Virus record (IMG/VR): IMGVR_UViG_3300028666_000022
Span: 62,001-126,000 of that record
Reading direction: 5' to 3' (one strand)
DNA length: 64,000 nt
Shown in pieces: positions 5,441 through 60,468 of this stretch. The position numbers were made by a program, and so were the translations under genes. The notes under the pieces were generated by a model, which was not told where the DNA came from, did no database searches, and was given only the letters and a program-made list of their open reading frames with translations. Position 1 is the stretch's first letter; each line of letters begins with the position of its first letter.

Positions 5441-5479
5441 TTTAAATTATTAATGTTATTAAATTATATTTTACTTATT

Positions 5480-25988: not shown

Positions 25989-26314
25989 ATTTTAATTACC
26001 TTTTCTTTTTTTCTTGGGTTCTTTAATCTCTTTTAGTTCTTCTTTTTTTAATCTAAAAGATTTCCCTTCTTTACGTAATTTTTTCTTCAGGTCTTCTTTT
26101 AGTTCTAAACCAATTTCTTCTGCAGCAAATAATGCATTAACATAATGATTTAGATCTTTTTTATCATAAAAAGAACCATTTAGAAATGCAATTCCTCTGT
26201 AAATGTTTTCATGGGACTTGAAATATTCATTATTCCGTTTTAATTCTACTTCGACACGTAAAGTTTCGGTGTTATTATCTATAGAATATTCAAGAATGTA
26301 AATTGCTTTTAAAA

Positions 26315-28837: not shown

Positions 28838-29600
28838 AATAGATTATTATATTAATATTTAAAAATTTTCATATTTATTTTTATTTTAACATAATAAAAT
28901 GAAAAACTTTTCATAATATTACAAAATGAATTAACATGATTTCTTTAAAACTAAGAAAAATGGATGCTGAATGGATTTTCTTGTGCGGAATGGTGGGATT
29001 TATTGTACTCATCTTTGTTTGTTTAAATTTACAAATGAATGGGACTTTTTATAGATTAAATGAAAAGATAAAGAAATGGAAAAAGAAAAATTAACTAAAA
29101 ATAATATTCATGAATAATTTCAAAAATTTCTTTCACATTATTCCAATAATTTTTTATTATTTATTGGAATCTGCTTTCTTAGCATTAATCGTTAATATTA
29201 TTTGGAGACTAATGTTTCAAAGTAGATGTAATATTATATTATCCTATGGTGATTTTGTTGCAATCATATGGGTGATAAAAATGTTATTATTTGATGTATT
29301 TAAAATTAGCAACACTTTTGGAAATAATCAAGAAATAAATAAAGAAAACAATAATTAATCATGAGTAGATATAAAAAAGAAACGTCAAGACTGACACTTA
29401 AATACATTAATGCAGATACTGAAGAACTTCTTTTTGAGGTGAGAGACAAAAATCATCTTGATATAGGATCATTTTTAAGCGATGGGGTAGTATCACAATT
29501 GTTACAAAATGAACTTAAGGGTAAAATTTTACCTGAAAATGTTATGGTTTTGGTTGTTGGTGAATTTAAATTAGTAGAATAAAAAATTTAAATATATTTT

Positions 29601-29632
29601 AGTAAAGTATGAATTAATATTCATACTTTACT
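29601..29632 (+). terminator. Intrinsic terminator
   Basis: agtaaagtatgaat/attcatactttact followed by a T-run. Confidence 0.7.
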
Positions 29633-29870
29633 TTTTTATAACTAATTAAAATCTACTAAAATACGTTAGTTGTTTTTTGTTTAACTAACAAACATAATGT
29701 TTTATCACAATCAAACATTTAATTTACATAATTCCCACCCAGTTTTTATTATAATATGTTGATTTACAAATGATTATAAAATAAATTAGTAATCAAATTT
29801 TGCCATTGTCTTAATTTTCAGGTATTTATAGTTAAATAAGAAACATTATAAATAATAAAAAATTAAAACA

Positions 29871-31154
29871 ATGGCACAATTTATTAAAGTCGAATGGCAA
29901 GCAAGTCCATCACCAATTTCTGGGTATAACATATATCGTGGTAATTCTGATGGCAATGTATCTAATACACCCCTTAACAATTTTCCAATTTTAACGTCAT
30001 TTTATGAGGACTACACAATATTTCCCGGTCAAACATATTGTTATGTAGTTACTGCTGTGTTAAATGGAGTGGAAAGTACTAGTTCATTACAAATATTTAC
30101 TGAACCAATTGCATTTATTAACTCACCATCACCTTTAGCATTAAATGCTTTTGGAGGATTTGGGTTATTAGCTGCTTCTACAATCACTAATGTTCCGGGA
30201 ACAGAATCAAGTGTTACAGGTGATGTTGGTGTATATCCGGGTTCATCTATTACTGGATTTGAAAATGTAAGAGTTTCGGGTTCATTTCACTTAGCTGATT
30301 ATGTTGCTGGTTATGCACAAAATTCATTAACAAACGCATTTAATGTTGGTATGGGTATTACTGGTGCAACAACAATACCAGCAGAATTAGGTGGACTTAG
30401 ATTAACTCCGGGTGTTTATTCAAATGTCACTTCAGTTCAAATTACTGGTACGTTAGTATTAGATGGTCAAGGAAATCCTAATGCAGCTTGGGTTTTTCAA
30501 ATAGGTTCAACATTAACAACTGCAGCAGGAAATAGTCATGTAGTTCTAGTTGGTGGTGCTCAAGCCACAAACGTAACTTGGTTAGTTGGTTCTTCTGCAA
30601 CATTAGACGTTGATACATTTTTTGCTGGTAATATTATTGCATATGCATCAATAACTGTTAATACCAACGCTTGTGTTAATGGTAGATTAGGTGCAAGAAC
30701 AGGTGCAATTACATTGGATGATAATGCTGTTATTGTTTATGGTGCATGTCATGAGGCTTTACCAGCATCACCTCCAAATACACCTCCATCACCACCTTCT
30801 GCACCAACAGGTATTATTATTGTTGATAGAAATGCTGATGGTGTTAATAACAATGGACCAGTACTACCAATTGTATTTACATCTGAAATTACTGATATTA
30901 CATCTACTAGTGCTAATGGTGGTGGAAACGTAACATTTGATGGTTACACACCAATTGTTTCACGTGGTGTAGCATTTGCTACTTCACCAAGTCCAACTGT
31001 ATTAAGTACAAACAATGGTATTGGTGCAGGTATTTTCGGTAGTTCTATTACTGAATTATTGTCAGATACAAGATATTATGTGAGAGCATATGCGATAAAC
31101 TCTGTTGGAATTTCTTATGGAGATAATGTAAGTTTCGTAACATTGCCAGCATAA
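29871..31154 (+). CDS. DUF3494 ice-binding-like protein with N- and C-terminal FN3-like domains
   Basis: FGLLAASTITN, GDVG, LTPGVY, LDGQGNPNAAWVFQIGSTLTT, GGAQATNVTW; GYNIYR and YYVRAYAIN FN3-like motifs. Confidence 0.9.
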   Translation: MAQFIKVEWQASPSPISGYNIYRGNSDGNVSNTPLNNFPILTSFYEDYTIFPGQTYCYVVTAVLNGVESTSSLQIFTEPIAFINSPSPLALNAFGGFGLLAASTITNVPGTESSVTGDVGVYPGSSITGFENVRVSGSFHLADYVAGYAQNSLTNAFNVGMGITGATTIPAELGGLRLTPGVYSNVTSVQITGTLVLDGQGNPNAAWVFQIGSTLTTAAGNSHVVLVGGAQATNVTWLVGSSATLDVDTFFAGNIIAYASITVNTNACVNGRLGARTGAITLDDNAVIVYGACHEALPASPPNTPPSPPSAPTGIIIVDRNADGVNNNGPVLPIVFTSEITDITSTSANGGGNVTFDGYTPIVSRGVAFATSPSPTVLSTNNGIGAGIFGSSITELLSDTRYYVRAYAINSVGISYGDNVSFVTLPA

Positions 31155-31163
31155 TAAAATTTG

Positions 31164-31203
31164 AACCATCAAAACTAAATAATTAATAATAGTTTTGATG
31201 GTT
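31164..31203 (+). terminator. Inverted repeat, possible terminator
   Basis: aaccatcaaaacta / tagttttgatggtt. Confidence 0.6.
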
Positions 31204-31242
31204 TATATATAAAAATAAAATTAAATAAAAATAAATAAAATT

Positions 31243-32322
31243 ATGAGTTCAATATTTAGAAAATTAAAAATAGCAAATAATGCAACTGTCACAGCTACAT
31301 TATTTAATAAACTAATGGATGCATTTGACAATGGTGTAGATGGTGTTTTTTTCACAACTCCTATTCGTTATTCTACTAATTATGGTATAACATCTCATTC
31401 AAGTGGTGGTCAAACACTAGCAACAATATTAACATCAGAAATAAATAATGTAAGTCTTGTTAGAGCAAATGGTGATAGTGTAAAATTAGTATCAGCAAGA
31501 CCGGGTTATTCTATTACAGTAAAAAATAATGGTCAACATAATCTATTGGTTTATCCATATGAATTAGATTTTATTGATGATGGATTAGTAAATGTGCCAA
31601 TAACAATGTTACCTGAAGAAACGAGAGTATTTAGATCAATTAGTGATTCGCGTTGGGAAAGTATGTCTGATAAAATTCAAAATAGTATATCTACACCATC
31701 GGCATATAATTTACATTTTGCTTCAACATTTGCGGTTCTTACTAACGGTACAATTACAATTAGTAATCCAAAATTAATAATACCTGATGGGGATTCAGGT
31801 GAAACTACGTTAACACCATTAACAGGTATAAAATTTATAAATGGTTCTAACAAAGGATTAAGTACAAGTGCAGTAACTAGTGCAAATAATTTATATAATG
31901 AATTAGTTACTTTAAGTGGTCATACTTTCGGTGCAGTAAATTTAGAAACTGTAAATGTTGGTTATGGTACAGGGAGATTTGTACCCGGTGTTTATATTGG
32001 CTCAACAGGTATAGTAACATCTGCTTCACAAACAATTACATTGGTTGGTGATGGAGATTATGTATTCATAAGTCAAGGTGCAATGACATTTGGTGCAACA
32101 AACACAATTTTATTAACACATGGTGCTCAAGCAAATAGAGTATTTTGGGTATCTGTTGGTGCAATCACCACTGGTGCAGTAAATGTTGTTAAAGGAAACT
32201 TTATAACCACTGCAGCAATTAATATTGGTGCAACAAATGATATAGAAGGAAGACTTTTATCAACAATGACAGCAGCAATCACATTTGATGGTACAGCGAC
32301 TAACCTTTATTTATCAAAATAA
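31243..32322 (+). CDS. Second DUF3494 ice-binding-like protein with a tail-fibre-like N-terminus
   Basis: FAVLT, VPGVY, YVFIS, GAQANRVFW, KGNFI, EGRLLS. Confidence 0.8.
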   Translation: MSSIFRKLKIANNATVTATLFNKLMDAFDNGVDGVFFTTPIRYSTNYGITSHSSGGQTLATILTSEINNVSLVRANGDSVKLVSARPGYSITVKNNGQHNLLVYPYELDFIDDGLVNVPITMLPEETRVFRSISDSRWESMSDKIQNSISTPSAYNLHFASTFAVLTNGTITISNPKLIIPDGDSGETTLTPLTGIKFINGSNKGLSTSAVTSANNLYNELVTLSGHTFGAVNLETVNVGYGTGRFVPGVYIGSTGIVTSASQTITLVGDGDYVFISQGAMTFGATNTILLTHGAQANRVFWVSVGAITTGAVNVVKGNFITTAAINIGATNDIEGRLLSTMTAAITFDGTATNLYLSK

Positions 32323-32685
32323 CAATTTATTAATGTTTTTTATCATGTAATAATATGAAAAATAGTAAACCCTTAAAAATAAAAGACCAGAACGATATTA
32401 TACTCTGGTCTTTTATTACAAAACGTAAAAAATTAGAAATACTAAATGATTCAATAGAATTAATTCGAAAAATTGGTAAAAATAAACCTAAAGATTTGAA
32501 TTTAATAAAAAAAATAATAAATCTTCATAATGAATATAGATTTCCATTGGTTCAACTTATGGACACTACACAAAAAAGTATTGATATTGCATATCAATTT
32601 TTAGTTTTTTTAACTAAATGAAAATTAATCAATAGATATTTATAAGTAATTATTAATATCATATCTACTATAATAAACTACTAAA

Positions 32686-34125
32686 ATGAATGATATTATA
32701 ATTGATTATAAGAAACAACTTAACATTAGTCTATCTAGTAATATTACAACAAAAACATTATCGTGTGTTTGTACATGGACTACTATTGGCTCAACAGTAC
32801 TGACTATTTTTCGTACAACATTATCTAATGATATTCCAAAGGTAATTATACCAACTCCAATCATAAATAACGATAGACAATTAAATTATTTAAAAGTCAC
32901 TAATTATGATAGTGTTAGTGCAATGGTTTTAATTAACGTAGGTAATGTTGATACCATAGGTTATAATATGAATATTATTAGTGTTTTATTATCACCCAAT
33001 GAGATATTATCTTATAATATCAAAGATGGCTTTTATATTATAGATTATAGGGGTAAAATAAAAAATATTCAAAATACCATTGAGATAACTTCTATACCAA
33101 TAAATACTGGAACTACAACCAATTCTATATTAGATTATTATACTAAGCCACAAACAAATTCATTGTTACTTCAAAAATCTAATACAGGTCATACACATTC
33201 TCAATATTTAACAGGATTAACAATTAATTACTCACTAATTAATCTATCTGGTATTACACATGTATTAAGTGGATATACACGTGGTTGGGTTACTGGATTA
33301 GATGCGTTTGGTCGTTCACAACAAAATTTTCGAGGTCAAAATTCGATATTAACTCTTGGTGGTTGGCAAGCTGATGGTAGTTCAACAATTTCAAGTGAAG
33401 GTGCTGTTTTTTATGGAGTAAACGCTAAAGGTATTCTAAGTGATGCTGAAGGTGGTTATGCTAGAATTAAACCAAACCGTTTTGGATTGGGTAATATTAT
33501 TACGGGTATCGATGGTTCAAACTTATTTTATTATTTTAGAGTGGATGATATTGAATTATATTTAAAAGATAATAATAATATTAAAACCTTTGCTGTAGAT
33601 AGAGCCAGTGGTGTAGTATCAGCTAATATGTTTCGAGGTGATATTGATTGGAATTACGTTACAACAAAACCTGATTTTTTGAGTAGTTATGGTTCATTAT
33701 ATGAACATAATTCAACTGGAACTACAATTACTGTATCAAATACTGAAACCAAAGGATGGATAACAGCATCAAGTTCTAGCAATCATTTAACTACCTTAAC
33801 AAAAAATATTACTTCTGATAGAATATCTATTTTAAGCGGTGGTTCTGGTACATATCAGATAAATGTTAATATAAATAACAGTTATTCAAATAATACTCCA
33901 CTTTATTGGATGGGTATATATAAAAATAATAATTTAATAACACAATTACAAACTTATTTGAGTGCAACAAACACAAATGATAGGTATAATTCGAGTATTA
34001 ATTCAATTATTTCTAGTGTTTCAGTAGGTGATTTTTTTGACATAAGATTTAATAGTAATAATCCCACGCCAAGTAATATTATCATATATAATATATCATT
34101 TAATATGAATCGGATAGGTACTTAA
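32686..34125 (+). CDS. Putative structural or fibre protein
   Basis: Thr/Ser/Asn/Gly-rich and beta-rich; YYTKxQ and HTH fibre-like repeats; lies next to the DUF3494 genes. Confidence 0.45.
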   Translation: MNDIIIDYKKQLNISLSSNITTKTLSCVCTWTTIGSTVLTIFRTTLSNDIPKVIIPTPIINNDRQLNYLKVTNYDSVSAMVLINVGNVDTIGYNMNIISVLLSPNEILSYNIKDGFYIIDYRGKIKNIQNTIEITSIPINTGTTTNSILDYYTKPQTNSLLLQKSNTGHTHSQYLTGLTINYSLINLSGITHVLSGYTRGWVTGLDAFGRSQQNFRGQNSILTLGGWQADGSSTISSEGAVFYGVNAKGILSDAEGGYARIKPNRFGLGNIITGIDGSNLFYYFRVDDIELYLKDNNNIKTFAVDRASGVVSANMFRGDIDWNYVTTKPDFLSSYGSLYEHNSTGTTITVSNTETKGWITASSSSNHLTTLTKNITSDRISILSGGSGTYQINVNINNSYSNNTPLYWMGIYKNNNLITQLQTYLSATNTNDRYNSSINSIISSVSVGDFFDIRFNSNNPTPSNIIIYNISFNMNRIGT

Positions 34126-34167
34126 AAAATAATTTATGATATTTTTAGATAAAAAAATTTTCAATAT

Positions 34168-34707
34168 ATGATATTAGCAATAAGAAATATGAAAGGAACT
34201 GCATGTATTATGTATGTGAAAAATGTTTTTAAAAAATTACATTTACACTATATCTCGATTGAACTTGGTAAAATTGAAACTATTGAAGATTTAGACGATA
34301 AAACATTATATAAGTTAAATGCCCTTCTAAAAGAAGGTGAACTTGAAATAATAGATAATAAAGAAATAACTATAGTAAAACAAATAAAATTAATCATATT
34401 TAATTTGATACAAAATAATAGATCATTAAACAATACTATATCTGTTTTAATTAGTAAAAAACTAAATAAAAAATATAGATATTTATCCAAAATATTTACA
34501 ATACAATGCGGTATTAATATTAACGAATATATTAAACAAGTAAAAGTAGAGAAAATAAAAGAATATCTTAAAGAAGATAAGTTAAAGATTTCTGAAATTT
34601 CTACTAAAATGCATTTTAGTAGTTCATCACAATTATCACATATTTTTAAAAAAACAACAAATATAACCCCCACACAATTTAAGAAATTATATTTCAATAA
34701 AAAATAA
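34168..34707 (+). CDS. AraC-family transcriptional regulator
   Basis: YRYLSKIF...KISEISTKMHFSSSSQLSHIFKKTTNITPTQF. Confidence 0.88.
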   Translation: MILAIRNMKGTACIMYVKNVFKKLHLHYISIELGKIETIEDLDDKTLYKLNALLKEGELEIIDNKEITIVKQIKLIIFNLIQNNRSLNNTISVLISKKLNKKYRYLSKIFTIQCGININEYIKQVKVEKIKEYLKEDKLKISEISTKMHFSSSSQLSHIFKKTTNITPTQFKKLYFNKK

Positions 34708-34771
34708 ATTTCATTATTTTGTAACAAATTCAAATCTTTTGCGTAATATATCATAACTTAAAAATATTGTC

Positions 34772-35770
34772 ATGAAAAAGATTTTAATTATATTATCAGT
34801 TCTTTTGTTTACATTTACTGGATTTTCACAATCAAGTATATTTCTAAACAAAATTTCTGATACTGAATTATCCCAAGCATATACAACAACCTTTTATGAA
34901 GGTCATCAAAGAAAATATAATAAAACCATTGAAGATTTTATTCAAGAATTTATTCAAGAATATGGTAAAGATGAATTAAATCTAGTTCTTTCTAAAATAG
35001 AAGATAATACACTTGACGATTATCTTAAATCTATTGATGATAAAGAATTAAATTTTGAAATAATTGCACTTAATTACGTTCTATTGAATAAACTTTCATT
35101 TGTTTCAAATGGTAAAATTTTTGTACTTACTTATGAACCAATAAAAAGTAGAAAATCATTTGATAGGGACTTAGATATTATTAGTGAAAAAAATTTATAT
35201 CTTTATCGTAGAGATGATGATGGTTGGAAAAAAGCATCTGATTTAATTAGAGTTGATTTCTTTTCTGATGTTTCGAGTAGAGAAGTAGATTATCATACTA
35301 CACATTTCAATGATGGTGAAGAAGTATTTTCTCCATATAGGTTGGGTTTCGGTATTGTTAAAAAGACTTCAAATAATTGGGTTTACATTACTTTTAAAAC
35401 AATATCTTGGCATTCTAATGTTGGTTATCAGAATTATAATTCAATATTAGTTTTAGTTCCCAAAGATAATAAAGAATATAATATATCTTTATTTGAACCA
35501 GAAAATAAGATTGGTAAAATAATTAAAAGATATCCTCTAAAGGTTTATAATTATAGTAATCAAATTTGGAATGAATATTTAAAAGACATAAATCTACCAG
35601 TATTATATGGTTTAAGTAAAATAGAATATGTTGAAATAGATAATGGTTTAACAATAAATTATTTCGATGGTAATAAAAATAAACCAATTACTGCGGGAAC
35701 ATTAAAATTCGAAAAGATTGATAATCAGATTATTTGTAGTGGTACAATTAAAATGAATAAAATTAAATAA
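34772..35770 (+). CDS. Secreted hypothetical protein
   Basis: Signal peptide MKKILIILSVLLFTFTGFSQ; promoter copy at 34721. Confidence 0.7.
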   Translation: MKKILIILSVLLFTFTGFSQSSIFLNKISDTELSQAYTTTFYEGHQRKYNKTIEDFIQEFIQEYGKDELNLVLSKIEDNTLDDYLKSIDDKELNFEIIALNYVLLNKLSFVSNGKIFVLTYEPIKSRKSFDRDLDIISEKNLYLYRRDDDGWKKASDLIRVDFFSDVSSREVDYHTTHFNDGEEVFSPYRLGFGIVKKTSNNWVYITFKTISWHSNVGYQNYNSILVLVPKDNKEYNISLFEPENKIGKIIKRYPLKVYNYSNQIWNEYLKDINLPVLYGLSKIEYVEIDNGLTINYFDGNKNKPITAGTLKFEKIDNQIICSGTIKMNKIK

Positions 35771-35783
35771 ATCTCACACATGG

Positions 35784-36025
35784 ACAGTACGTAATAACAT
35801 ATAATTTATATTAACTCTTTATGGTCGAAACCATTGGCGATACTGCAATCACCTCTATTCCATTATCAAACCGATGTTTGGAATTGCTTTTATTAGCTAT
35901 TATTTTTAATTCAACATCTAAAAGATATTGTCTTGCTAAATTGTTTAACTTTTATGATTTTACATTACCAAAGTATTAATTTAGGTAATAACCACAATAT
36001 ATCAAAGAACGTAAAGATAAATACT
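35784..36025 (-). ncRNA. Stand-alone TnpB omegaRNA cassette B; predicted guide CCATGTGTGAGATTTATTTA
   Basis: 35816-35891 matches 4111-4187 (2 substitutions + 1 loop indel); same ACAGTAC end; leader shared with cassette A. Confidence 0.8.
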
Positions 36026-36074
36026 ATAAATTTTGAAAATTTTAAATAAATTTATATAAAAATTATAATAAGTT

Positions 36075-36800
36075 ATGAACAGCATTTTATTAAATAACAT
36101 AGTTTTTAAAACGCAATCATTTAGAAAAAATTTTGATTTAATTCTTAAAAATGAAAATATTATAACTGAATGCGAAGGTACTATATCAGAATTGAGAATA
36201 TCTGAACGTAAATTACCTTTAGTTATTGGTGAATATGGTTTCTCTGTTTGGAATATATCATTAGCTAAATTATTAAATATAGATTTAATTAAATTAATTA
36301 AATCACATGAATTAGAAAATAGTTATGATGAATTAATTAAACTTATCGAAAATAATAAATTTAGCATATTTAATTATGACAAAATAGTTATAATACATAC
36401 TTTATTAATTCATCCTGATTATCGAAAATCAGAAATAACTGAAGAATTTATTGAATGTATATATAGAGAGTATCATTCAAATAATACTGCAATAATTGCA
36501 TTAGTTAAACCCATACAAGATAATATCATCGATTCTGATTTTTATTTTAATCATAAAACAATTTCAATAAAAAATAAAATTGGAAACACTAATGAATGTA
36601 ATTTAATTCCAACTATTGAATATTATTCTTTAAAAGATCTAATGAAAAATAAAGACAAAGAATTAAATGAATATAAATTATTTGCTGTTGCGAATAGATG
36701 TGGATTACAGAGAATAGAAGATTCATATTTATTTTTATTTTCTCCCGAAAAGACTGTTAAACGAATTAAAGAGAAAAATAATATAAAAGTTAAGTTTTGA
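36075..36800 (+). CDS. Hypothetical protein (possibly degenerate GNAT fold)
   Basis: LLIHPDYRK motif only. Confidence 0.5.
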   Translation: MNSILLNNIVFKTQSFRKNFDLILKNENIITECEGTISELRISERKLPLVIGEYGFSVWNISLAKLLNIDLIKLIKSHELENSYDELIKLIENNKFSIFNYDKIVIIHTLLIHPDYRKSEITEEFIECIYREYHSNNTAIIALVKPIQDNIIDSDFYFNHKTISIKNKIGNTNECNLIPTIEYYSLKDLMKNKDKELNEYKLFAVANRCGLQRIEDSYLFLFSPEKTVKRIKEKNNIKVKF

Positions 36801-51707: not shown

Positions 51708-54700
51708 TTATTCTAAAGTTAATGTTGATAAATCGTTTTCATCTAATTGAACATTTATTGTATAATCAGGATTGATATTTACTCTATGTTCAACAACTAA
51801 TATTTTTTTAACATAATTTTTTATTATGTGAATTAAATCACGGAATTCTTCTACACTGTCTTCATCCAGTTTCCCCATTACTTCATCCAATAAAAACATC
51901 ATGGGTTTTGCTTTTACGTTTATTTGATTCAGTGCAAATTTTAAAACAATACTTGAAAATGTTCTTTCTTTTCCACAAGCACTAATACAATCAATTATTG
52001 CATCGGGTCTTTTATAATGCATTAACTTAGGTCTTAAATCATCTGGATCTAACCAAACTTTAAATTTACTATCAGATAATATTGTTTCAAGTGTTGAATT
52101 TATTTTAGGTATAATATAATTACTTAACATTTGAGTAGGAATACCATCTCTATGAACACAAGTTTTATATAAATTTATTACAGAATCTCTATATTCTTGT
52201 TCTTTAAATGTAGTGATTAATTCATTACTAGTTTTTATTTTATTTTGTTTTTCAGAAATTAATGATTTTTTTGTGAACATATCTTCTTTATATCCTTGCT
52301 CTTCTGTTTCTAATGTAGTTAATTTTAACTTAGCTGCAGCTATACCAGTTTCAATTTTTTTATTTTCTTCGATTTGAAGTAAACTATTGTTATAATTATC
52401 TATTTTTTGTTGTAAAATACTAATTTTCAGTTCTTCATTCTGAATCAGAATTGGTGTTTGATTTAATTCGGTTTGAAATTCTTTACGTTTTTCAACATCA
52501 TTTTTATCATTAGTTAATTCACCAATTTGTTTTAAAATTACTTCCATTTTAAGACCAGCAGTCTTAATATTATCTTCAATTTTTTTTATTTCTTTATTTT
52601 GTATATTAATCTTGTCTTGATGATCTTTTTTATCTCTAGTTTCTTTAATTTTAATCTGATCTGCAATTTCAAACATTAATTTTTCTTTCTCTTTTATTAA
52701 ATCATCAACATGACTTTGATGTTCAGGTAGAAGTGGTTGTTTACAAGTAGGACAAGTTTTACTTTCTTTTAGTTCAATAATTTCTGTTCTATATTTACCA
52801 CCATCTTTTTTTAAATTAAAAATTTCGCCATTAATGATTTCAATTCTATGTTCTTCATCTCTAATGATTTGTTCTGCATTTTTAATTAAAATCTTTTGAT
52901 TATATTCATTGGTTTTATGTTCATCTTTTTTTCCAATTAAATCAAGTAATTTTGTTTCATCATAACTTTCTTTAAGTAATTTAATGTTATCGTTTAAAAC
53001 TGTCTCACGTGCCTTAAATTCATCTATGTTTTTATTATGAGTGCTTATGTTCCCATTAGTATTAACTATGTTCAAATTACTTATTTCAGTATCTATTTTA
53101 AATAATTTCTTTGTTAGATCTTCAACATATTTTTTCCCAATTGTTACTTTATTTTGTACTTCAGGAATTGTTACAGTATCAAATACTTTAATATCATTTT
53201 CGAGAGTAGTTATGTTTTGTGTTAACTCATCAATCTGTTGAGTGGTTTTAACAACATCAACAGTAATTCTATTCTTTTCATTAACCTTTTTTTGATATAC
53301 TTTTAATGTTTCTAATTTTTTATCAAAAATATCTAAACCACTATCTCTCAATAATTCGTCAAGAAAGTTGGACATTTGATTGGTTGAAAGTATCTTATTG
53401 AGACTGTCTGATGTTGTCATAACTATCCTCATGAAATTATCATAATCGCCAATAATTCTTTCAATTTTCTTTTGTGTTTTTACTTTTCTGTCTTCATCTA
53501 ATTTTTCTAATGAAGTATTTTCATTCATTTCTTCATCAGGATTAGAAAGTAGATAATAATTTACAGTGGTTGGTGCTCCATTAATAGTACCATCTTTTGC
53601 TTTATTTATTTCTGTTCTTCTCTTAATACCATAATATTCTCCATTAGCATCTAAAACTAAATAAGAGTCACATGAGGTTGCACCATTTCTATTATTCACA
53701 TAACGTAAATCACCATATTTAATTCTGCTTTCAGTTTCTGGAGTTTTATTAAAAAGAGAATATAATATATTTTTATATATTGTTGTTTTACCATTTTCGT
53801 TTTTTCCAACTATCTGATATATACCATCCTGATCTCTCCAATTAATATCAAATTTACCATAAGACATGAAATTGTTACAGCCAAATTTAATAATATTCCA
53901 TTCTATATTTGAAACATCGTCAATAATAATTTTTGAATTAATTTCATCAATATCTAATTTAATTATGTCTTCAATTAATTGTTTCTCTGTACCGATTTTT
54001 TCTAAATATTCTCTAAATATTTTATGTTGAACTGCAGAATTAGTAATGTTTTCTAATGTAATTTTATCTTTTACTTCAATCTTTTCATTTTCAATGAATT
54101 CATTTTTATTTGAAATTGTAATATTTTCATATTTTTTATTGAAATATTGTGTTAATTTATTCTCATTTTCTTTATTACGTGTTTGTGGTAAAGTACCCCA
54201 AATAAAACGTATTTTCATATACTTGGTTGGATTAGATATTTCATAATCCAAATCATCAAAATCAGTATAGGGTGTTATTTTAATATTTTTAAAAGAATAT
54301 TCATTATAAACTGGAATTTCTTTTACTGTTTTATCGACAACATCCCATAACAAATAACCATGAAATGCATCATCTCCTTCAGAAAAATCTTGTGAAATAA
54401 GAGATCCTGAATAAGCTTTTGTTTTATTTTTATCTAAATATTGTTGCAAATGGATGTCACCCGCTAACAAATAATCAGATTTGAAGTCACTTATTTTATA
54501 ATAAGATTTACTGTTCATTTCAAAACCAGTCGTAGATTTACAACCACCAATAGGATCATGAAACAAATCAATATATATTTTATTACTCGTTTGTTTATCT
54601 ATTTCAATTTGCTTACCAGTTTTAGATTTCCAAGGATTATTATTTTTTTCTCCATGATGCCAAACTGCCCATGTTATATTTTCATCGTCATAAAATCCTG

Positions 54701-55043
54701 TTTTATCATAATAAATTATATTAGGATTATTAATCAATGTAACAATTGCTTTTATTGAATCAATCCTCTTTGAATTGTTTGCTAAATAATCATGATTACC
54801 TCTAGTAATTCTAACCGGAGCAATTAATGCTAATGTATTTAATAATTCTGAAGCCAATATTAATTGTTCTCCTTGTAGATTAACATATTCATGAACCAAA
54901 TCACCAACAATCACAATTCGATCTGGTTTTTGTTCGTTAAGAGATTTAATTAAATTTATGAATACAGATTCATACTCTTCATTACGTGTTGGTGATTTAC
55001 GTAAATGTATGTCTGAAAGATGTGCGATTTTAGTTATAGTCAT
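51708..55043 (-). CDS. Fused Mre11/SbcD nuclease and Rad50/SbcC ATPase
   Basis: DIH, GD, GNHD, GDIH phosphoesterase motifs; Walker A GKNENGKT; CPTC hook; Walker B FLLDE; H-loop VEH. Confidence 0.92.
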   Translation of the reverse strand: MTITKIAHLSDIHLRKSPTRNEEYESVFINLIKSLNEQKPDRIVIVGDLVHEYVNLQGEQLILASELLNTLALIAPVRITRGNHDYLANNSKRIDSIKAIVTLINNPNIIYYDKTGFYDDENITWAVWHHGEKNNNPWKSKTGKQIEIDKQTSNKIYIDLFHDPIGGCKSTTGFEMNSKSYYKISDFKSDYLLAGDIHLQQYLDKNKTKAYSGSLISQDFSEGDDAFHGYLLWDVVDKTVKEIPVYNEYSFKNIKITPYTDFDDLDYEISNPTKYMKIRFIWGTLPQTRNKENENKLTQYFNKKYENITISNKNEFIENEKIEVKDKITLENITNSAVQHKIFREYLEKIGTEKQLIEDIIKLDIDEINSKIIIDDVSNIEWNIIKFGCNNFMSYGKFDINWRDQDGIYQIVGKNENGKTTIYKNILYSLFNKTPETESRIKYGDLRYVNNRNGATSCDSYLVLDANGEYYGIKRRTEINKAKDGTINGAPTTVNYYLLSNPDEEMNENTSLEKLDEDRKVKTQKKIERIIGDYDNFMRIVMTTSDSLNKILSTNQMSNFLDELLRDSGLDIFDKKLETLKVYQKKVNEKNRITVDVVKTTQQIDELTQNITTLENDIKVFDTVTIPEVQNKVTIGKKYVEDLTKKLFKIDTEISNLNIVNTNGNISTHNKNIDEFKARETVLNDNIKLLKESYDETKLLDLIGKKDEHKTNEYNQKILIKNAEQIIRDEEHRIEIINGEIFNLKKDGGKYRTEIIELKESKTCPTCKQPLLPEHQSHVDDLIKEKEKLMFEIADQIKIKETRDKKDHQDKINIQNKEIKKIEDNIKTAGLKMEVILKQIGELTNDKNDVEKRKEFQTELNQTPILIQNEELKISILQQKIDNYNNSLLQIEENKKIETGIAAAKLKLTTLETEEQGYKEDMFTKKSLISEKQNKIKTSNELITTFKEQEYRDSVINLYKTCVHRDGIPTQMLSNYIIPKINSTLETILSDSKFKVWLDPDDLRPKLMHYKRPDAIIDCISACGKERTFSSIVLKFALNQINVKAKPMMFLLDEVMGKLDEDSVEEFRDLIHIIKNYVKKILVVEHRVNINPDYTINVQLDENDLSTLTLE

Positions 55044-55721: not shown

Positions 55722-56270
55722 TTATCTAAATACCTCTTCACTAATATTCTTTTTTAGTTTGGTTTTAATATAATTAATTTTATTACTCACAGTACTACTA
55801 GTAATTTGCAATTTATCCCCAATTTCACTATAATTATATCCTTGAACATATTTTAAATCCAATAAAGTAAAATCATATGGGGATAATTGTGTTGAAATAT
55901 AATTAATTGCGTTAATATTATCAAAAGCATTTGAAGTTAATGTTGAACAATTATATAATAAATTTGTAAAATCCGAAGAATAAATTATTGTTTTATTTCT
56001 CCACTTATCAACCATATAATTTTTTGTTATAGTAAGAACCCATGATTTAAATTTCGATTTATTGTTATCAAAATCTTTTATATTTAGAAAAACCTTAATT
56101 AATATCTCAGATACATCATCCTCAATATCATTATATGTAGAATATTTATATACAATATAATTTTTTACTATTTTTTTATATTTATTATAAATAATTTTTT
56201 GTGCTGCCTGATTTCCAATCAAAATTTTTTGAATCAGAATCATATCCTCTTCTTTCTCTGCTACTATCAT
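55722..56270 (-). CDS. ECF-type sigma-70 family RNA polymerase sigma factor
   Basis: Region 2: EDDVSEILIKVF..FKSWVLTITKN..VD; region 4: GYNYSEIG..TVSNKI. Confidence 0.88.
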   Translation of the reverse strand: MIVAEKEEDMILIQKILIGNQAAQKIIYNKYKKIVKNYIVYKYSTYNDIEDDVSEILIKVFLNIKDFDNNKSKFKSWVLTITKNYMVDKWRNKTIIYSSDFTNLLYNCSTLTSNAFDNINAINYISTQLSPYDFTLLDLKYVQGYNYSEIGDKLQITSSTVSNKINYIKTKLKKNISEEVFR

Positions 56271-57267
56271 AAGGTTTTTGTAATTTCTTCATAAAATAAT
56301 CATCAGTAATTAAAGACCTTGCTGTATATAATGCTTTAATTACTTCTTCTTCACCAAAATTTCTCCTTAATTCATCAACATCATCTTTTGTTGGTAATTT
56401 AACTATCTTAACACTATCTTCACAACCAACATATATCGTTTCTAACATATAAAATAAATCAATTGCATTCGCATATGCATCTGGATCAAGTAAAACAATT
56501 ACTTGTGGTTTTAATTCTTTTAATCTTAAAAATAAAGTTGTTGATAATGTCTTGCCTAATAATGGTATTGCATTTGGAACTGAAAACATATCAGTAACAC
56601 CTTCAACTAAACATACTGGAGAATCCCAATTAATATATCCTTCATTAAATATTATTAAATCTTTATTTGATTTTGGATTATCATATTTATTTTTCAATTT
56701 CCTATCATAAGCCCTCGCTACAAAATAATTAATATCACCATTTCTATCATAAGAGGGAAATATTATCCTCTTAGCATATTTTCCTGTTGTACAAAAACCG
56801 ATCCTATATTTTAATATCTTTTCTCTGTTTATTTTTCTGTCATTTATTAAATAATTATATGCCTCAAAATGTTCTGAATTATTTACATCCATTTGTGAAA
56901 ATAATATCATTTCTTGTGGAAGACTGACTTGTACATATTCTTTTTCTTCATCATAATCGTTAGAAGAATAGTTCCCATAAACACTTAAATATGATTTATA
57001 TAAATCATAATCTATTTTCGTTCCATATAATCGAATTAATTTACCTAAAGAACCAGAAAAATTAGGTTCTGAGCAACGCCAACATCTAAAAACTAACCTA
57101 TTCCTATGTGTTGATATTTCTAAATTAAATTTATTATCGGCATATAATAATCCATCTCGTTCTTGACAACGAGGACAACATGTTTGTAGCTGAGAAGAAA
57201 CACCTAATCCTCTTGTATCTGGAAAGATATTTCCAATAATCTGATGAAATTCAATACCATCTATCAT
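56185..57267 (-). CDS. DnaG-like DNA primase (Zn-binding + TOPRIM); start probably the ATG at 57267
   Basis: CPRC...CWRC; RIIFP..YFVAR; LVEGVTD; LLDPDA; TATATTTG at 57273-57280 just upstream. Confidence 0.85.
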   Translation of the reverse strand: MIDGIEFHQIIGNIFPDTRGLGVSSQLQTCCPRCQERDGLLYADNKFNLEISTHRNRLVFRCWRCSEPNFSGSLGKLIRLYGTKIDYDLYKSYLSVYGNYSSNDYDEEKEYVQVSLPQEMILFSQMDVNNSEHFEAYNYLINDRKINREKILKYRIGFCTTGKYAKRIIFPSYDRNGDINYFVARAYDRKLKNKYDNPKSNKDLIIFNEGYINWDSPVCLVEGVTDMFSVPNAIPLLGKTLSTTLFLRLKELKPQVIVLLDPDAYANAIDLFYMLETIYVGCEDSVKIVKLPTKDDVDELRRNFGEEEVIKALYTARSLITDDYFMKKLQKPYDSSRERRGYDSDSKNFDWKSGSTKNYL

Positions 57268-57284
57268 AGTAGCAAATATAAACA

Positions 57285-57322
57285 AAAAATTGCTATAAAA
57301 CAAGAGAGTTATAGCAATTTTT
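57285..57322 (-). terminator. Intrinsic terminator closing the DGR transcript
   Basis: aaaaattgctataa / ttatagcaattttt (14-bp stem). Confidence 0.7.
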
Positions 57323-57335
57323 AAAAATAAGATAA

Positions 57336-57356
57336 TTAATTACCGATTTTCTTCAT
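57336..57356 (-). pseudogene. Putative stub of a DGR reverse transcriptase (MKKIGN*)
   Basis: Sits where the RT normally starts after TR and spacer; resembles MKRIGNL-type N-termini recalled for Bacteroidota DGR RTs. Confidence 0.5.
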
Positions 57357-57466
57357 TCTTTTTGTTTTTTAAAAAATCATCTTCGTTTTCACTACCAATG
57401 CTCTTCCTTTTATCATAGTCATTTTTTGCCATGCTGGCAAGGTCTACACTATTATTTACAATAAAA

Positions 57467-57538
57467 CATAACTGCGAACTAGTATTCGTATTCAGCGTAT
57501 TATAGTAATAATTCGTATTGTAAAAACTGAAACAAGAA
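57467..57538 (-). repeat. DGR template repeat (TR)
   Basis: 72 bp; differs from the VR at 13 sites, all A in TR; rich in AAT codons in the VR frame. Confidence 0.93.
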
Positions 57539-57579
57539 AATACTAATGTGAGGCAATAGTGTACAATCTATAATCTATT

Positions 57580-58017
57580 TTACATTAAATATTCTTCATA
57601 TAATTTTGTAAATGTCTTTCCACAATATTCTGCCTTTTCCTGACTTTCAAGGCAAAACCGCGAACCAGTATTCGCACCCAGCGCATCATAGTAATAACCC
57701 GCATTGAAAAAACCGAAACAAGAATCAGCATTAAAATAAGGATACCATTTCTTTTGATTATTATTAGTGTAATCAGGTTTCCAATCTTGATTTATTACAT
57801 AGATTATATGTTCCAATTTTAATTGAGCAACAATATGTTTTTTATTAATGTTAAGATAATCATTTGGAACTGGTAATACTCTACAAGCATCATCATATGA
57901 CTTAATGTCTCTCCAGTTATAAAAATTAACTAGCTTAAATACAATATTAGTTCTAGTTGATTTTTCATTATCAACTACATAACCCTCTGGAGCACAAATT
58001 CTAATTTCTTTTTCCAT
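57580..58017 (-). CDS. DGR target protein (small, C-terminal CLec-like variable region)
   Basis: Contains the VR ending in GSRFC; ECF-type promoter copy at 58048-58072 upstream. Confidence 0.85.
   Translation of the reverse strand: MEKEIRICAPEGYVVDNEKSTRTNIVFKLVNFYNWRDIKSYDDACRVLPVPNDYLNINKKHIVAQLKLEHIIYVINQDWKPDYTNNNQKKWYPYFNADSCFGFFNAGYYYDALGANTGSRFCLESQEKAEYCGKTFTKLYEEYLM
57653..57724 (-). repeat. DGR variable repeat (VR)
   Basis: Encodes SCFGFFNAGYYYDALGANTGSRFC; TR in the same frame reads SCFSFYNTNYYYNTLNTNTSSQLC. Confidence 0.93.
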
Positions 58018-59181
58018 CTTATTTTAAATTTAATTATTTACTTAATATACGTAAACATATCTTATTTGTTACAAATTATTTTAATATAATCCCAACGATT
58101 TAAACCAATTATTAATCCAATCAATTCTGTATCCCCATTTACCCGAAATAATATATTTAATTGGCATTCCAATAAGTAAGATTAACATAAAAATCAATGC
58201 AAATGGTAATGTAAATCTAATTATTAATGGTGTTTCAATCTTTTCTTTTTTATAAAATTCTAAATCAGAACCACGTAAACGATCGACAATATCATCGGCA
58301 TTACATTTCTTTAATTCAGGTATTCTATTTTGTAATTCAAATGCAACTGAATTATAATCTATTCTTCTTTGTTTAAAATAAAATGACATAATATTATTTA
58401 TTTAATAATTCTATTGAACAATCATTATACCCTAATTTATATGCATAATCTAATGAAATTTTAAATGTTTCAATAAATTCATTTGAAAAATCTTCACCAA
58501 TACTCAAACGATATTTACCTATATCAAAAACATATTTCCCATCAGCTATAGTAAGTTTAATTGGTGTTTCAACAATTATTACACCTTGTAAAATTTCATT
58601 TTCTTTCATAATATTAAATTTAAATAATTATCATTAAAACTTCTTTTCTCCTTCTAAGAAAGGAAAAAACATAATCAACCTATTCATAAATGCAGGTGGA
58701 ACTATTACAAAATTTCTTCCTAGTTTTAGGTGTTGCTGTTGTAATTCGTTGAAAATCCTAACAACAGTTTGTTTTAATGCACTATCATCAACTACATTAG
58801 AATCCATAACATCTGAACTATTTGAACCATTTTTTAACCTTTGATTTTCAGCAAAAATTTTAGCATAATTTTCTTTTGCTTCACCTAATTCAGTCCTCAA
58901 TAATTCCATTTCTGAAGATAATGCTTCTACCTGTTCTTGTAACCAAGAATTATCATTTAATTGAGTACTTGAAGCCACTTCAGATTTTTCCTGTTCCTTA
59001 ACCTTTTCATTTGGATTCAATGGTATGTCCTCCAATAATTTTGCTACTGTTTCTTTAGCTTTTAAATCACGTTCTTCTTCAGGAGTAGTTTTTTTCACTA
59101 CCTTCTTTACTTCTACTTTTTTAACTACTGGAACAACGGCTTTTTTAGCACCTTTGGCTAAACTCATTAATTTGTTTTCTT

Positions 59182-60468
59182 TCATAATATAATTATTTTT
59201 AATTCTTTTAATTTATTTTCTAAATACTCTTCAATATTTTTTACTTTATATGATATTCTAATTAATCTTATATTTTTCTTTTTACAATAATCATTTTTTA
59301 TTTTATCATTAGCTTGTCTTAATTTTAACCCTTTTTCTCCACCAAAAAAATTTATAGCCATAAAATGTTGTCTACCATCAAATTCAATTAATACGTTATA
59401 ATTATTAAGATAAAAATCAAATGATAATTTTTGTTTATTTTTACAATCGTCAAATTTTTTTTGTTGTTCAAAATTAAAATTATTTTTAGCTAAAAAATTT
59501 TTTATTGTTAACTCACCCCTAGAACTACTACAAATTGAACATCCATTACCACTTAAATGACTGTGTGGTGTTTGTAAAAATTCTCCATGAATAGGACAAA
59601 TAATTTTTAATTTTTTATTTGATGATATATATTCTGTTTTAGAATAATCATATTTATTATTATGTATAATATTTGCTTTTTCAATAAAAAAATTAATGTT
59701 TGTTTTTGATCCAGAACATAATGAACATCCATTAGTTCTTAAATGAGAATTTGGTATTTGTTCAAATATTCCATGAATCGGACATTTAATTTTTACTTTA
59801 ATATTTGCACTAATATAATTAGTTTCCGAATAATCATATTTATTATTATGAACAATATTTGCTTTGTTTATGAAAATTTCAGTGGTTTTTTTAATTTTAT
59901 CACTACATTTTGAACATCCATATCCAGTTAAATGACCAGATGGTAATTGTTCAAATATTCCATGAATTGGGCATTTAATTTTTACTTTGATGTTTGCACC
60001 AATATAATTTATCTCTGAATAATCAAATTTATTGTTATGAATAATATTTGCTTTTTTAATAAATTCACTAGTATTAGATTTTTCTGTACCACCACATTTT
60101 GGACATCCATCTCCTATTAAATGATCATTTGGTCTTTGAATAAACTCTCCGTGTGTTGGGCAAATAATTTTTACTTTAGTTTTATTTTGTTTATATTCAA
60201 CTAATGAATAATCATACTTATTTTTATGAATAATTTTTGCTTTTTCAATAAATTCATTAGAATTAGATTTTATATTACCCGCACATTTTGGACATCCTCT
60301 ACCATCTAAATGATCGTTTGGTGTTTGTTCAAAAACATCATGTTTTAAACAAATAATTTTAACTTTAGTAGAACTATTAACATAATTAACAAAAGTATAT
60401 TCATATTTATTTTTATGAATATACTTTGCTTTTTTTATAAACTCTTTTGTTGTTAATTTTTTACCCAT
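59182..60468 (-). CDS. Homing-endonuclease-like protein with five Zn-ribbon repeats and a C-terminal PD-(D/E)XK/Vsr-like domain
   Basis: 5x FI.KA..IH.NKYDYS...IC..HG.F.Q.P..HL.G.GC..C; FDFYL..IEFDGRQH..DKIK. Confidence 0.85.
   Translation of the reverse strand: MGKKLTTKEFIKKAKYIHKNKYEYTFVNYVNSSTKVKIICLKHDVFEQTPNDHLDGRGCPKCAGNIKSNSNEFIEKAKIIHKNKYDYSLVEYKQNKTKVKIICPTHGEFIQRPNDHLIGDGCPKCGGTEKSNTSEFIKKANIIHNNKFDYSEINYIGANIKVKIKCPIHGIFEQLPSGHLTGYGCSKCSDKIKKTTEIFINKANIVHNNKYDYSETNYISANIKVKIKCPIHGIFEQIPNSHLRTNGCSLCSGSKTNINFFIEKANIIHNNKYDYSKTEYISSNKKLKIICPIHGEFLQTPHSHLSGNGCSICSSSRGELTIKNFLAKNNFNFEQQKKFDDCKNKQKLSFDFYLNNYNVLIEFDGRQHFMAINFFGGEKGLKLRQANDKIKNDYCKKKNIRLIRISYKVKNIEEYLENKLKELKIIIL

What the first reader, a model, noticed from the sequence alone, without database searches (positions are those of the whole stretch)
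57285..58072. Minimal DGR lacking reverse transcriptase and Avd: target, TR, spacer, RT stub, terminator
SEEN: the 72-bp TR (57467-57538) and VR (57653-57724) differ at 13 positions, all TR adenines on the coding strand. The TR is enclosed by a 9-bp inverted repeat (57445-57453 / 57555-57563). It is followed by a TTGCCA-GCA-TGGCAA hairpin (57426-57440), then MKKIGN* and a 14-bp terminator. No RT or Avd ORF is recognisable in the 64 kb. KNOWN: DGRs need an RT for adenine-specific mutagenic retrohoming. INFERENCE: either a non-autonomous DGR of about 0.8 kb using an RT in trans (phage, host or co-infecting element), or one recently frozen by RT deletion. The absence of non-A mismatches argues for recent activity.
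Basis: partly seen in the sequence, partly recalled or inferred. Interest (0 to 1): 0.85.

Follow-up and report, generated by a model that had tools for sequence, protein, structure and literature searches.

The report
Truncated DGR cassette without reverse transcriptase
A 340-kb phage carries the front part of a diversity-generating retroelement (target gene, template repeat and its structured RNA) that stops six codons into the reverse transcriptase gene, so it is most likely a frozen remnant and not a working mutagenesis machine.

Summary
TR (57467-57538) and VR (57653-57724) differ at 13 sites, all TR adenines on the minus (coding) strand (P about 7e-9).

About 65 related phage loci show the standard cassette: one to three small target genes, TR, a spacer of about 100 nt, a 320-aa DGR reverse transcriptase starting MKRIGNLY, and a conserved ORF of about 100 aa. 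Here the target, TR, a stem enclosing the TR and the spacer RNA (a weak full-length match to Rfam RT-17) are intact. Homology stops after MKKIGN.

The window is part of a 339,898-bp phage contig. I found no RT, no second target and no accessory ORF in the 58% of it I could fetch. Five independent assemblies are identical here, and contigs from four more runs agree, so the RT loss is not an artefact and the VR consensus does not vary.

The cassette lies in a 1,304-nt island between two conserved backbone genes. None of 79 related phages has any DGR part there, and one variant-strain contig appears to lack the island. The island edge falls within 8 nt of the point where the RT is cut.

Best reading: a truncated, probably frozen DGR remnant (about 0.75). 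An RT acting in trans is not excluded (about 0.13), because 42% of the genome was not seen and no raw reads were available.

The parts
57331..58634 (-). Lineage-specific island: two small ORFs, a promoter, the target gene with VR, TR, spacer RNA and six RT codons
   Evidence: A variant-strain contig in run X5 joins 57330 to 58635 with 10 other letters between; its shorter matching side is only 30 nt. In 72 of 79 related phages the p183 homologue lies next to primase. In the 28 loci whose coordinates I printed the gap was about 70-90 nt in most, and 1.1-1.3 kb in L551, L552 and L585. None of the 79 has an RT, target or accessory ORF within 7 kb. Island GC is 25%, the same as the backbone.
58044..58073 (-). 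Promoter-like site of the phage's own type (TGTAACAAA-N13-CGTATATT), 27 nt upstream of the target ATG
   Evidence: Seven such sites in the window and 16 in 120 kb of the contig. That it works as a promoter is inferred.
57580..58017 (-). DGR target gene, 145 aa, from a large family of small phage proteins of unknown function
   Evidence: Translation. phrog_11581 at E 1e-20, no Pfam match. 1725 representatives at E<=0.001. Family alignment is conserved except for the stretch between FGF and GSRLC. Model pLDDT 85.6 with the VR loop near 50; no PDB fold match.
57653..57724 (-). Variable repeat (VR), codons for about residues 99-122 of the target
57555..57563 (-). 5' arm of the stem that encloses the TR (TACACTATT)
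   Evidence: Exact 9-nt complement of 57445-57453. A stem of at least 8 nt in the same position, with different sequences, occurs in 24 of 53 distinct relatives.
57467..57538 (-). Template repeat (TR), rich in AAT and ACG codons in the VR frame
   Evidence: A search of IMG/VR with every TR adenine masked found only this TR and this VR.
57445..57453 (-). 3' arm of the TR-enclosing stem (AATAGTGTA)
57358..57444 (-). Spacer RNA between TR and RT start; diverged copy of the Rfam motif RT-17 (RF03020)
   Evidence: Full-length match (model 1-95 of 95) at 29.5 bits, gathering score 40.4, E 8e-4. The same position in relative L032 scores 44 bits, above gathering. In a 47-sequence alignment, 9 of 10 consensus pairs show compensatory changes, and the window sequence forms all 10.
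57426..57440 (-). P1 hairpin of the spacer (TTGCCA GCA TGGCAA)
   Evidence: Covarying versions in relatives: TTACC/GGTAA, TTGCT/AGCAA, TTGTC/GACAA, TTGGC/GCCAA.
57373..57405 (-). P2 region of the spacer with the conserved TGGTA...GAA core
57336..57356 (-). RT stub: ATG plus five codons (MKKIGN) and a stop, preceded by the family's ribosome-binding block
   Evidence: Family RTs start MKRIGNLY or MKRINNLY. DNA homology runs through ATGAAGAAAATCGGTAATT and ends at about 57338.
57283..57322 (-). Hairpin with a 14-bp stem and a T run, terminator-like; belongs to the backbone, not to the island
   Evidence: Fold -13.4 kcal/mol. The variant-strain contig keeps 57301-57330 directly after the p183 gene.
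56185..57270 (-). Flanking backbone gene: DNA primase
   Evidence: phrog_47 at E 4e-29; DNAG_N.
58634..59185 (-). Flanking backbone gene p183, function unknown; sits next to primase in related phages
58081..58609 (-). Two small ORFs of the island (102 aa and 71 aa), function unknown
   Evidence: ORF list. No Pfam match. A p71 homologue occurs in only 2 of 79 relatives.

Best explanation
This is the front part of a compact, Avd-less diversity-generating retroelement, cut off 6 codons into its reverse transcriptase gene.

In intact relatives, a transcript carrying the TR and the RT-17-type spacer RNA is reverse-transcribed by the adjacent RT. The RT misreads template adenines, and the cDNA replaces the VR at the 3' end of one to three small target genes. 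That the RT-17-type spacer does the job of the BPP-1 spacer is inferred by analogy with phage BPP-1, where the spacer RNA primes cDNA synthesis.

What is shown here:
- The target gene, VR, TR, TR-enclosing stem, spacer RNA, ribosome-binding block and first six RT codons are all present.
- The RT body and the roughly 100-aa ORF that follows it in relatives are absent.
- The piece lies in a 1.3-kb island inserted between two conserved backbone genes of a 340-kb phage. The island edge is within 8 nt of the RT break.

What is inferred:
- The VR acquired its 13 A-site changes while an RT was still available, either in a donor phage or in an ancestor.
- The element either arrived truncated by recombination or lost the RT and accessory gene at the junction.
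- The VR is now frozen, and the target gene is expressed as an ordinary phage gene from a promoter of the phage's own type.
For: - TR/VR pattern.
- Standard cassette in about 65 of 79 relatives, with the same spacing: TR end to RT start is 93-110 nt in most, 110 nt here.
- Spacer homology up to codon 6, then none.
- RT-17 match and covariation.
- The family RT profile finds nothing in the window or in 197,264 nt (58%) of the source contig. There is no second target and no accessory ORF, and no RVT_1 among the precomputed Pfam hits of the called genes in the walked loci.
- Five independent assemblies are 100% identical over 1.0-2.9 kb. Contigs from four more runs carry the same VR with no differences.
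- None of 79 syntenic related phages has any DGR part. Backbone order is exonuclease, p183, primase, sigma factor.
- One variant-strain contig lacks the island.
- Decay is recurrent in this family. L018 and L020 keep two targets and a 3'-truncated TR without an RT. L012, L014, L015, L003 and L009 keep target homologues with no TR.
Against: - 42% of the contig (142.6 kb, including 168.7-241.4 kb) was not seen, so a second RT in the same genome is not excluded.
- The VR evidence is at consensus level only. The runs are held as assembled contigs at depth about 2-6, which drop minority variants.
- All cis RNA elements are intact and TR and VR have no non-A mismatch. That would also fit an element still being used.
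A compatible RT from a co-infecting phage or a prophage is therefore conceivable.
- The island boundary rests on one contig with a 30-nt flank.
Confidence: 0.75

Rival explanations
1. Non-autonomous DGR. The TR-spacer RNA is still made, and an RT of the same family supplied in trans uses it, so the VR is still diversified now and then. The RT could come from the unseen part of this genome, from a co-infecting phage or from a prophage of the host.
For: - All cis elements are intact: the TR-enclosing stem, and every one of the 10 consensus pairs of the spacer.
- No non-A mismatch between TR and VR.
- The RT family is abundant and highly conserved, and also occurs in Bacteroidota genomes.
- Wu et al. 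note that TR and RT can lie on different strands and so need not be co-transcribed (PMC5758913).
- 42% of the contig was not seen.
Against: - No RT, second target or accessory ORF in the 58% seen.
- No hit on a 339,898-nt contig among the best 120 relatives of the nearest RT.
- The VR is identical in all assemblies and runs examined.
- The roughly 100-aa ORF that accompanies the RT in 59-61 of 64 relatives is also missing.
- No promoter was identified for the TR apart from read-through from the target gene.
Confidence: 0.13
2. A full cassette (target, TR, RT, accessory ORF) was inserted here, and a later deletion inside this genome removed the RT and accessory ORF. This is a variant of the best explanation, and the outcome (a frozen VR) is the same.
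For: - The stub keeps the start codon and ribosome-binding block, as after an internal deletion.
- The target gene has a promoter of this phage's own type, which suggests residence in this phage lineage.
- Island GC equals backbone GC.
Against: The downstream end of such a deletion would have to coincide, within about 8 nt, with the edge of the original insertion. No relative with a full cassette at this site was found among 79.
Confidence: 0.3
3. Assembly artefact: the RT is present in the real genome but was collapsed or lost at about 57335.
For: None found.
Against: Contigs from JGI 3300028666, JGI 3300028654, ENA ERZ27245401, ENA ERZ27245387 and Logan SRR8464959 all run from the target through the stub into primase, with 100% identity. 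Contigs in runs X2 and X3 span the same junction.
Confidence: 0.01
4. Not a DGR: the TR is a decayed partial duplicate of the gene's 3' end, and the A bias reflects AT mutation pressure in a 25% GC genome.
For: The genome is very AT-rich.
Against: - All 13 differences are at A of one strand in one copy (P 7e-9).
- The TR is followed by the family's spacer RNA and RT start at the standard distance.
- The same layout with an intact RT occurs in about 65 relatives.
Confidence: 0.01

Closest known systems
Bordetella phage BPP-1 DGR (mtd-avd-TR-spacer-brt)
   Same: - A TR/VR pair differing only at TR adenines.
- The VR at the 3' end of the target gene.
[quoted passage not shown] In BPP-1 nearly the whole spacer is needed, and cDNA synthesis is primed from spacer A56 (PMC6182149).
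   Different: - No Avd in this family.
- The target is a 145-aa protein with no detectable C-type lectin fold.
- The spacer is of the RT-17 type, not RT-10.
- The TR is closed by a long-range stem.
- The RT itself is missing here.
Architecture A DGRs (TR-RT core, no accessory gene) and the avd-less Lineage 3 of Wu et al. 2018 (PMC5758913)
   Same: Compact cassette with target, TR and RT on one strand and no avd. Wu et al. report 29% of DGRs without accessory genes.
   Different: I did not place this RT family in their tree. Relatives carry a conserved ORF of about 100 aa after the RT, which is neither avd, HRDC, MSL nor CH1 (CH1 is 160-169 aa). The present copy has neither RT nor that ORF.
Rfam RT-17 RNA motif (RF03020; Weinberg et al. 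2017, PMC5737381)
   Same: Full-length alignment to the model, with the P1 hairpin and the UGGUAG...CGAA core. It sits directly upstream of where the RT gene starts. Weinberg et al. showed that RT-10 lies in the BPP-1 TR-RT gap and speculated that other RT motifs serve other DGRs.
   Different: - The score here is below the gathering threshold (29.5 against 40.4 bits).
- Of 12 relatives with an intact RT that were scanned, only L032 passed.
- The motif here is followed by a 6-codon stub, not by an RT gene.
RT-less relics in the same target family (L018 = IMGVR_UViG_3300021167_000414; L020 = IMGVR_UViG_3300025009_000266)
   Same: Target genes with VRs and a TR-like repeat with A-only mismatches, but no RT.
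   Different: In those relics the TR is cut at its 3' end (62 and 51 nt) and the spacer is gone. Here the TR, the stem, the spacer and the RT start are all complete.

Membership tests
Diversity-generating retroelement (DGR) | TR/VR repeat pair whose mismatches fall at adenines of the TR | tested here: met
   13 of 13 mismatches at TR adenines; P 7e-9.
Diversity-generating retroelement (DGR) | VR inside the coding sequence of a target gene, usually near its 3' end | tested here: met
   The VR covers about residues 99-122 of a 145-aa ORF.
Diversity-generating retroelement (DGR) | A DGR-clade reverse transcriptase encoded next to the TR | tested here: not met
   Only six codons remain. There is no RT in the window or in 58% of the contig.
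Diversity-generating retroelement (DGR) | cis-acting RNA next to the TR (spacer) of the kind needed for cDNA priming | tested here: met
   The spacer aligns block by block with 46 relatives and forms all 10 covariation-supported pairs. That it primes cDNA synthesis is inferred from BPP-1.
Diversity-generating retroelement (DGR) | Accessory gene (Avd or another) | tested here: not met
   No Avd in this family. The conserved ORF of about 100 aa after the RT in 59-61 of 64 relatives is absent here.
Diversity-generating retroelement (DGR) | Ongoing diversification: VR polymorphic at TR-adenine positions within populations | tested here: inconclusive
   The consensus VR is identical in 5 assemblies and in contigs of 4 further runs. 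Only assembled contigs at low depth were available, no raw reads.
Diversity-generating retroelement (DGR) | Target with a C-type lectin or Ig-like fold displaying the VR | tested here: inconclusive
   The model is confident overall (pLDDT 85.6) but has no PDB match (best E 8.8). The VR loop is modelled at pLDDT about 50. BFVD matches are uncharacterised phage proteins.
Rfam RT-17 (RF03020) | Score at or above the family's gathering threshold | tested here: not met
   29.5 bits against 40.4. Relative L032 scores 44 bits.
Rfam RT-17 (RF03020) | Consensus helices present, and a position directly upstream of an RT gene | tested here: met
   Full-length alignment with P1 and P2 paired. It ends 1 nt before the ATG of the RT stub.

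The most novel reading that the evidence does not exclude
A naturally RT-less, non-autonomous DGR: a 0.7-kb unit (target, TR, enclosing stem, RT-17-type RNA) that keeps every cis element and is diversified only when a compatible RT of this very common and highly conserved family is supplied in trans. The RT could come from the unseen part of the genome, from a co-infecting phage or from a prophage.
Probability: 0.12. Interest if true: 0.8.

Novelty: new member of a known kind. Interest (0 to 1): 0.35.

Why it matters
As a remnant, it is an ordinary stage in the decay of a known kind of element. It shows that small DGR target genes outlive their mutagenesis machinery in large phages.

Three by-products are of more use than the remnant itself:
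- The Rfam motif RT-17, described only as 'near RT genes', is placed as the TR-to-RT spacer of a very large family of phage DGRs without Avd.
- That family has a covarying stem that loops out the whole TR.
- That family has a conserved, unnamed ORF of about 100 aa after the RT, fused to the RT in one case.

The truncated copy keeps all cis RNA elements. It is therefore a ready-made natural donor for testing whether RTs of this family can act in trans.

Tried and rejected
- **Megablast against GenBank phages:** the locus gave no match.
- **Finding the RT in the source contig by pattern scans of IMG/VR:**
  - Codon-restricted AT-rich patterns were dropped after a leave-one-out test gave at most 57% sensitivity.
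- **Protein search with the nearest RT (L032):** 8000 clusters were scored and only the best 120 listed. None lies on a 339,898-nt contig. This is a weak negative.
- **Fetching the contig piecewise:** a phage-specific promoter motif worked.
- **Walking with all 12 context look-ups:** brought coverage to 58%.
- **Supplements of Roux et al. 2021:** searched for 3300028666 and Ga0265336 and found nothing, but the stored files are cut, so this is uninformative.
- **The DNA search with scope 'loci':** used in the hope of getting contig names; it lists none.
- **Fold search of the target against PDB:** no match, so I did not claim a C-type lectin fold.
- **The roughly 100-aa ORF after the RT:** considered as Avd or CH1 and rejected. 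It has no Pfam match, its size differs from CH1, and it follows the RT, whereas avd in BPP-1 lies upstream of the TR.
Full report
**1. The observation**

The 72-nt repeat is real. TR 57467-57538 and VR 57653-57724 are 82% identical. All 13 differences lie at T of the + strand in the TR, which is A on the minus strand that encodes the target. The TR has 22 such A in 72 nt, so the chance that 13 random sites all fall on them is 7e-9. In the VR frame the TR reads as AAT-, ACG- and AGT-rich codons. The VR lies near the 3' end of a 145-aa ORF, 57580-58017 on the minus strand.
- the 9-nt inverted repeat around the TR;
- the TTGCCA-GCA-TGGCAA hairpin;
- the mini-ORF MKKIGN* (57336-57356);
- a 14-bp hairpin with a T run (57283-57322).

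**2. Where the window comes from**

The target protein is found, 100% identical, on IMGVR_UViG_3300028666_000022, which is the same as JGI contig Ga0265336_10000007 (339,898 bp). The window is contig 62001-126000 in the same orientation. GC is about 25%. The window encodes primase, a Dda-like helicase, a fused SbcD/SbcC-like protein, homing endonucleases and a TnpB-like protein. Further along the contig there are a baseplate gp25-like protein and a tail sheath.

**3. The family**

The target belongs to a large family of small phage proteins: 1725 representatives at E<=0.001. There is no Pfam match, and phrog_11581 has no known function. The scaffold is conserved (NQxKWYPxF ... FGF ... GSRLCF ... 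EKAEY ... LY). The stretch between FGF and GSRLC is hypervariable and rich in Y, S, T, D, N, A, C and G.

A scan of IMG/VR with a family alignment returned 79 related loci. In about 65 of them a conserved RT of about 320 aa lies on the same strand, just downstream of one to three tandem targets. It matches Pfam RVT_1 and carries the motifs PIGNYLSQYFANFYL and YYFRYADD. My TR/VR finder recovered 70-89-nt TRs with 10-21 A-only mismatches to each VR. The distance from TR end to RT start is 93-110 nt in most loci. Here it is 110 nt to the ATG of MKKIGN*.

The RTs begin MKRIGNLY or MKRINNLY. Aligned with the relatives, our spacer has every conserved block: ACCTTGCC..GGCAAAAAAT, GCATTGGTA, GAAGATGA, the AAACAAAAAG ribosome-binding block and ATGAAGAAAATCGGTAATT. 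It then diverges completely.

A further conserved ORF of about 100 aa, with no Pfam match, overlaps the RT stop in 59-61 of 64 relatives and is fused to the RT in L052. None of these cassettes has an Avd.

**4. The RNA**

Rfam places the spacer in RT-17 (RF03020).
- The window region 57358-57444 (-) aligns over the whole model at 29.5 bits. This is below the gathering score of 40.4, with E 8e-4.
- The same position in L032, the relative with the most similar spacer, scores 44 bits.
- Weinberg et al. described RT-1 to RT-19 only as motifs near RT genes. They showed that RT-10 lies in the BPP-1 TR-RT gap and speculated that others serve other DGRs (PMC5737381).
- On a 47-sequence alignment RNAalifold predicts 10 pairs. 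Nine have compensatory double changes, and the window sequence forms all 10.

In 24 of 53 distinct relatives, a perfect complement of at least 8 nt joins the segment 5' of the TR to the segment just 5' of the P1 hairpin. The sequences differ between relatives (TATGCTGC, TACGCTGC, TGTGGTGT, TGCGCCGC, TATAATAT and others), so the TR is looped out by a covarying stem.

In BPP-1 nearly the whole spacer is needed, and cDNA synthesis is primed from spacer A56 (PMC6182149). By analogy I infer that the RT-17-type spacer does this job here. That inference was not tested.

**5. Is the RT anywhere else?**

- In the window: a profile of the 65 family RTs, run with filters off on all six frames, finds nothing (best E about 2).
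Codon-restricted patterns were too insensitive.
- I therefore fetched the contig piece by piece, using a promoter-like motif specific to this phage (TGTAACAAA-N13-CGTAWWWT) and by walking with context look-ups.
- Together this gives contig 25219-36539, 41825-53742, 55796-168693, 241404-293696 and 320466-329299. That is 197,264 nt, or 58%.
- In that 58% there is no family RT (best E 1.3), no second target-family gene, no accessory ORF, and no RVT_1 among the precomputed Pfam hits of the called genes in the walked loci.
- A protein search with the L032 RT scored 8000 clusters. The best 120 are 68-74% identical to the query, and none lies on a 339,898-nt contig.
- 42% of the contig remains unseen.

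**6. Is the VR changing?**

Contigs from five assemblies are 100% identical to the window over 1.0-2.9 kb, including the VR, the TR and the junction with primase. They are JGI 3300028666, JGI 3300028654, ENA ERZ27245401, ENA ERZ27245387 and Logan SRR8464959. This excludes an assembly artefact.

Fourteen rhizosphere runs hold the region, all stored as contigs. In four of them (X2-X5), contigs covering the VR show no differences. This is consensus-level evidence at depth about 2-6. It cannot exclude minority variants.

**7. The island**

- In run X5, a contig of a variant strain with many substitutions in the flanks joins 57330 to 58635, with 10 other letters between. It skips 1,304 nt, and its shorter matching side is only 30 nt.
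- A metagenome scan with the primase returned 79 related large phages, with primase 56-68% identical. None has an RT, a target or the accessory ORF within 7 kb.
- In 72 of the 79, the p183 homologue lies next to primase. The backbone order is exonuclease, p183, primase, sigma factor. In the 28 loci whose coordinates I printed, the gap between p183 and primase is about 70-90 nt in most. Three have other inserts of 1.1-1.3 kb, which suggests a hot spot.
- The DGR piece therefore lies in a lineage-specific insertion, 57331-58634. The insertion also holds two small ORFs and a promoter of the phage's own type, 27 nt upstream of the target ATG.
- RT homology stops at about 57338, within 8 nt of the island edge. 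Either the element arrived already truncated, or a later deletion ended at the old junction.
- Island GC equals backbone GC.

**8. Decay elsewhere in the family**

L018 and L020 keep two targets and a 3'-truncated TR with A-only mismatches, but have no spacer and no RT. L012, L014, L015, L003 and L009 keep target homologues without any TR; L003 and L009 are from similarly AT-rich phages. The target gene therefore often outlives the retroelement. The present copy is an early stage of that decay.

**9. The target protein**

The AlphaFold model is confident (pLDDT 85.6, pTM 0.72), except for the VR loop at about 50. It has no PDB match (best E 8.8). It matches only uncharacterised phage proteins in BFVD and the ESM Atlas. 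I therefore do not call it a C-type lectin fold.

**10. Verdict**

The best-supported reading is a truncated, RT-less DGR remnant whose VR is frozen (0.75). A non-autonomous element served by an RT in trans is possible but unsupported (about 0.13). Wu et al. note that TR and RT need not be co-transcribed (PMC5758913), and this RT family is very common. The decisive tests are a scan of the remaining 142.6 kb and deep raw-read mapping on the VR.

Noticed in passing
window 957, 7018, 34720 (+); 23243, 23988, 27701, 58073 (-): Phage-specific promoter-like motif TGTAACAAA-N13-CGTAWWWT: 7 sites in the window and 16 in 120 kb of the contig. Several other 300-360 kb IMG/VR phages share it (for example 3300037067_018912, 3300005613_000002, 3300014494_000005).
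   Followed up: partly
window 43205, 43692, 46195 (-); contig 326448; L315:2256: A second conserved motif, AGTATTTATAATAAAT, lies a few bases upstream of ATG codons and looks like a late promoter. A third motif, ATCTTTG..ATAAACCAATAAA..ATG, clusters at contig 28-49 kb and precedes the target homologues in L003.
   Followed up: partly
L016:11926-12216, L021:11924-12226, L029:8806-9108, L052:10963-12219 and others: A conserved ORF of about 100 aa (MNxFSQFNIK...GFPFTT...NERYLFT, no Pfam match) overlaps the RT stop in 59-61 of 64 intact cassettes and is fused to the RT in L052. It is a candidate accessory protein of this Avd-less DGR family.
   Followed up: partly
L032:8556-8931 and L032:12324-12908: The AT-rich relative with an intact DGR carries a tmRNA gene (63.6 bits) about 1 kb upstream of the first target gene and a serine recombinase directly after the RT.
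   Followed up: no
window 51708-55043 (-): One 1111-aa ORF combines a calcineurin-like phosphoesterase domain with AAA_23/SMC_N and a Rad50 zinc hook. This looks like a fused SbcD/Mre11 and SbcC/Rad50 protein.
   Followed up: no
window 4106-6058 (-) and 10563-11189 (+): A TnpB-like gene (OrfB_IS605 plus the Cas12f TNB domain) sits next to a small serine recombinase. A paralogous recombinase lies 5 kb away.
   Followed up: no
window 29871-31154 (+) and 31243-32322 (+): A protein with a fibronectin type III domain and an ice-binding-like domain (E 7e-52), followed by a paralogue with 35% identity over 119 residues.
   Followed up: no
window 59530-59999 (-), inside ORF 59182-60468: Three tandem copies of about 186 nt (76-82% identical) inside a 428-aa HNH/DUF723 homing-endonuclease-like gene. 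In variant contigs of runs X3 and X5 this stretch shows several joints.
   Followed up: no
L551:1171-2268, L552:1937-3035, L585:3526-4847: In three related phages the p183-primase gap holds other inserts of 1.1-1.3 kb with no DGR parts, which suggests a hot spot for insertions.
   Followed up: no
window 57659-57676 (-) and the matching part of the TR: A short hairpin (GCGAA TACTGG TTCGC) lies inside the 3' part of both VR and TR, followed in the VR by GTTTTG. I did not test whether it matters for cDNA initiation or homing.
   Followed up: no
contig about 269.8-271.3 kb and 288.4-291 kb (L540, L541): Thy1 with a LAGLIDADG insert, and a UvrD-like helicase with an intein plus LAGLIDADG. The genome is rich in selfish insertions.
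   Followed up: no
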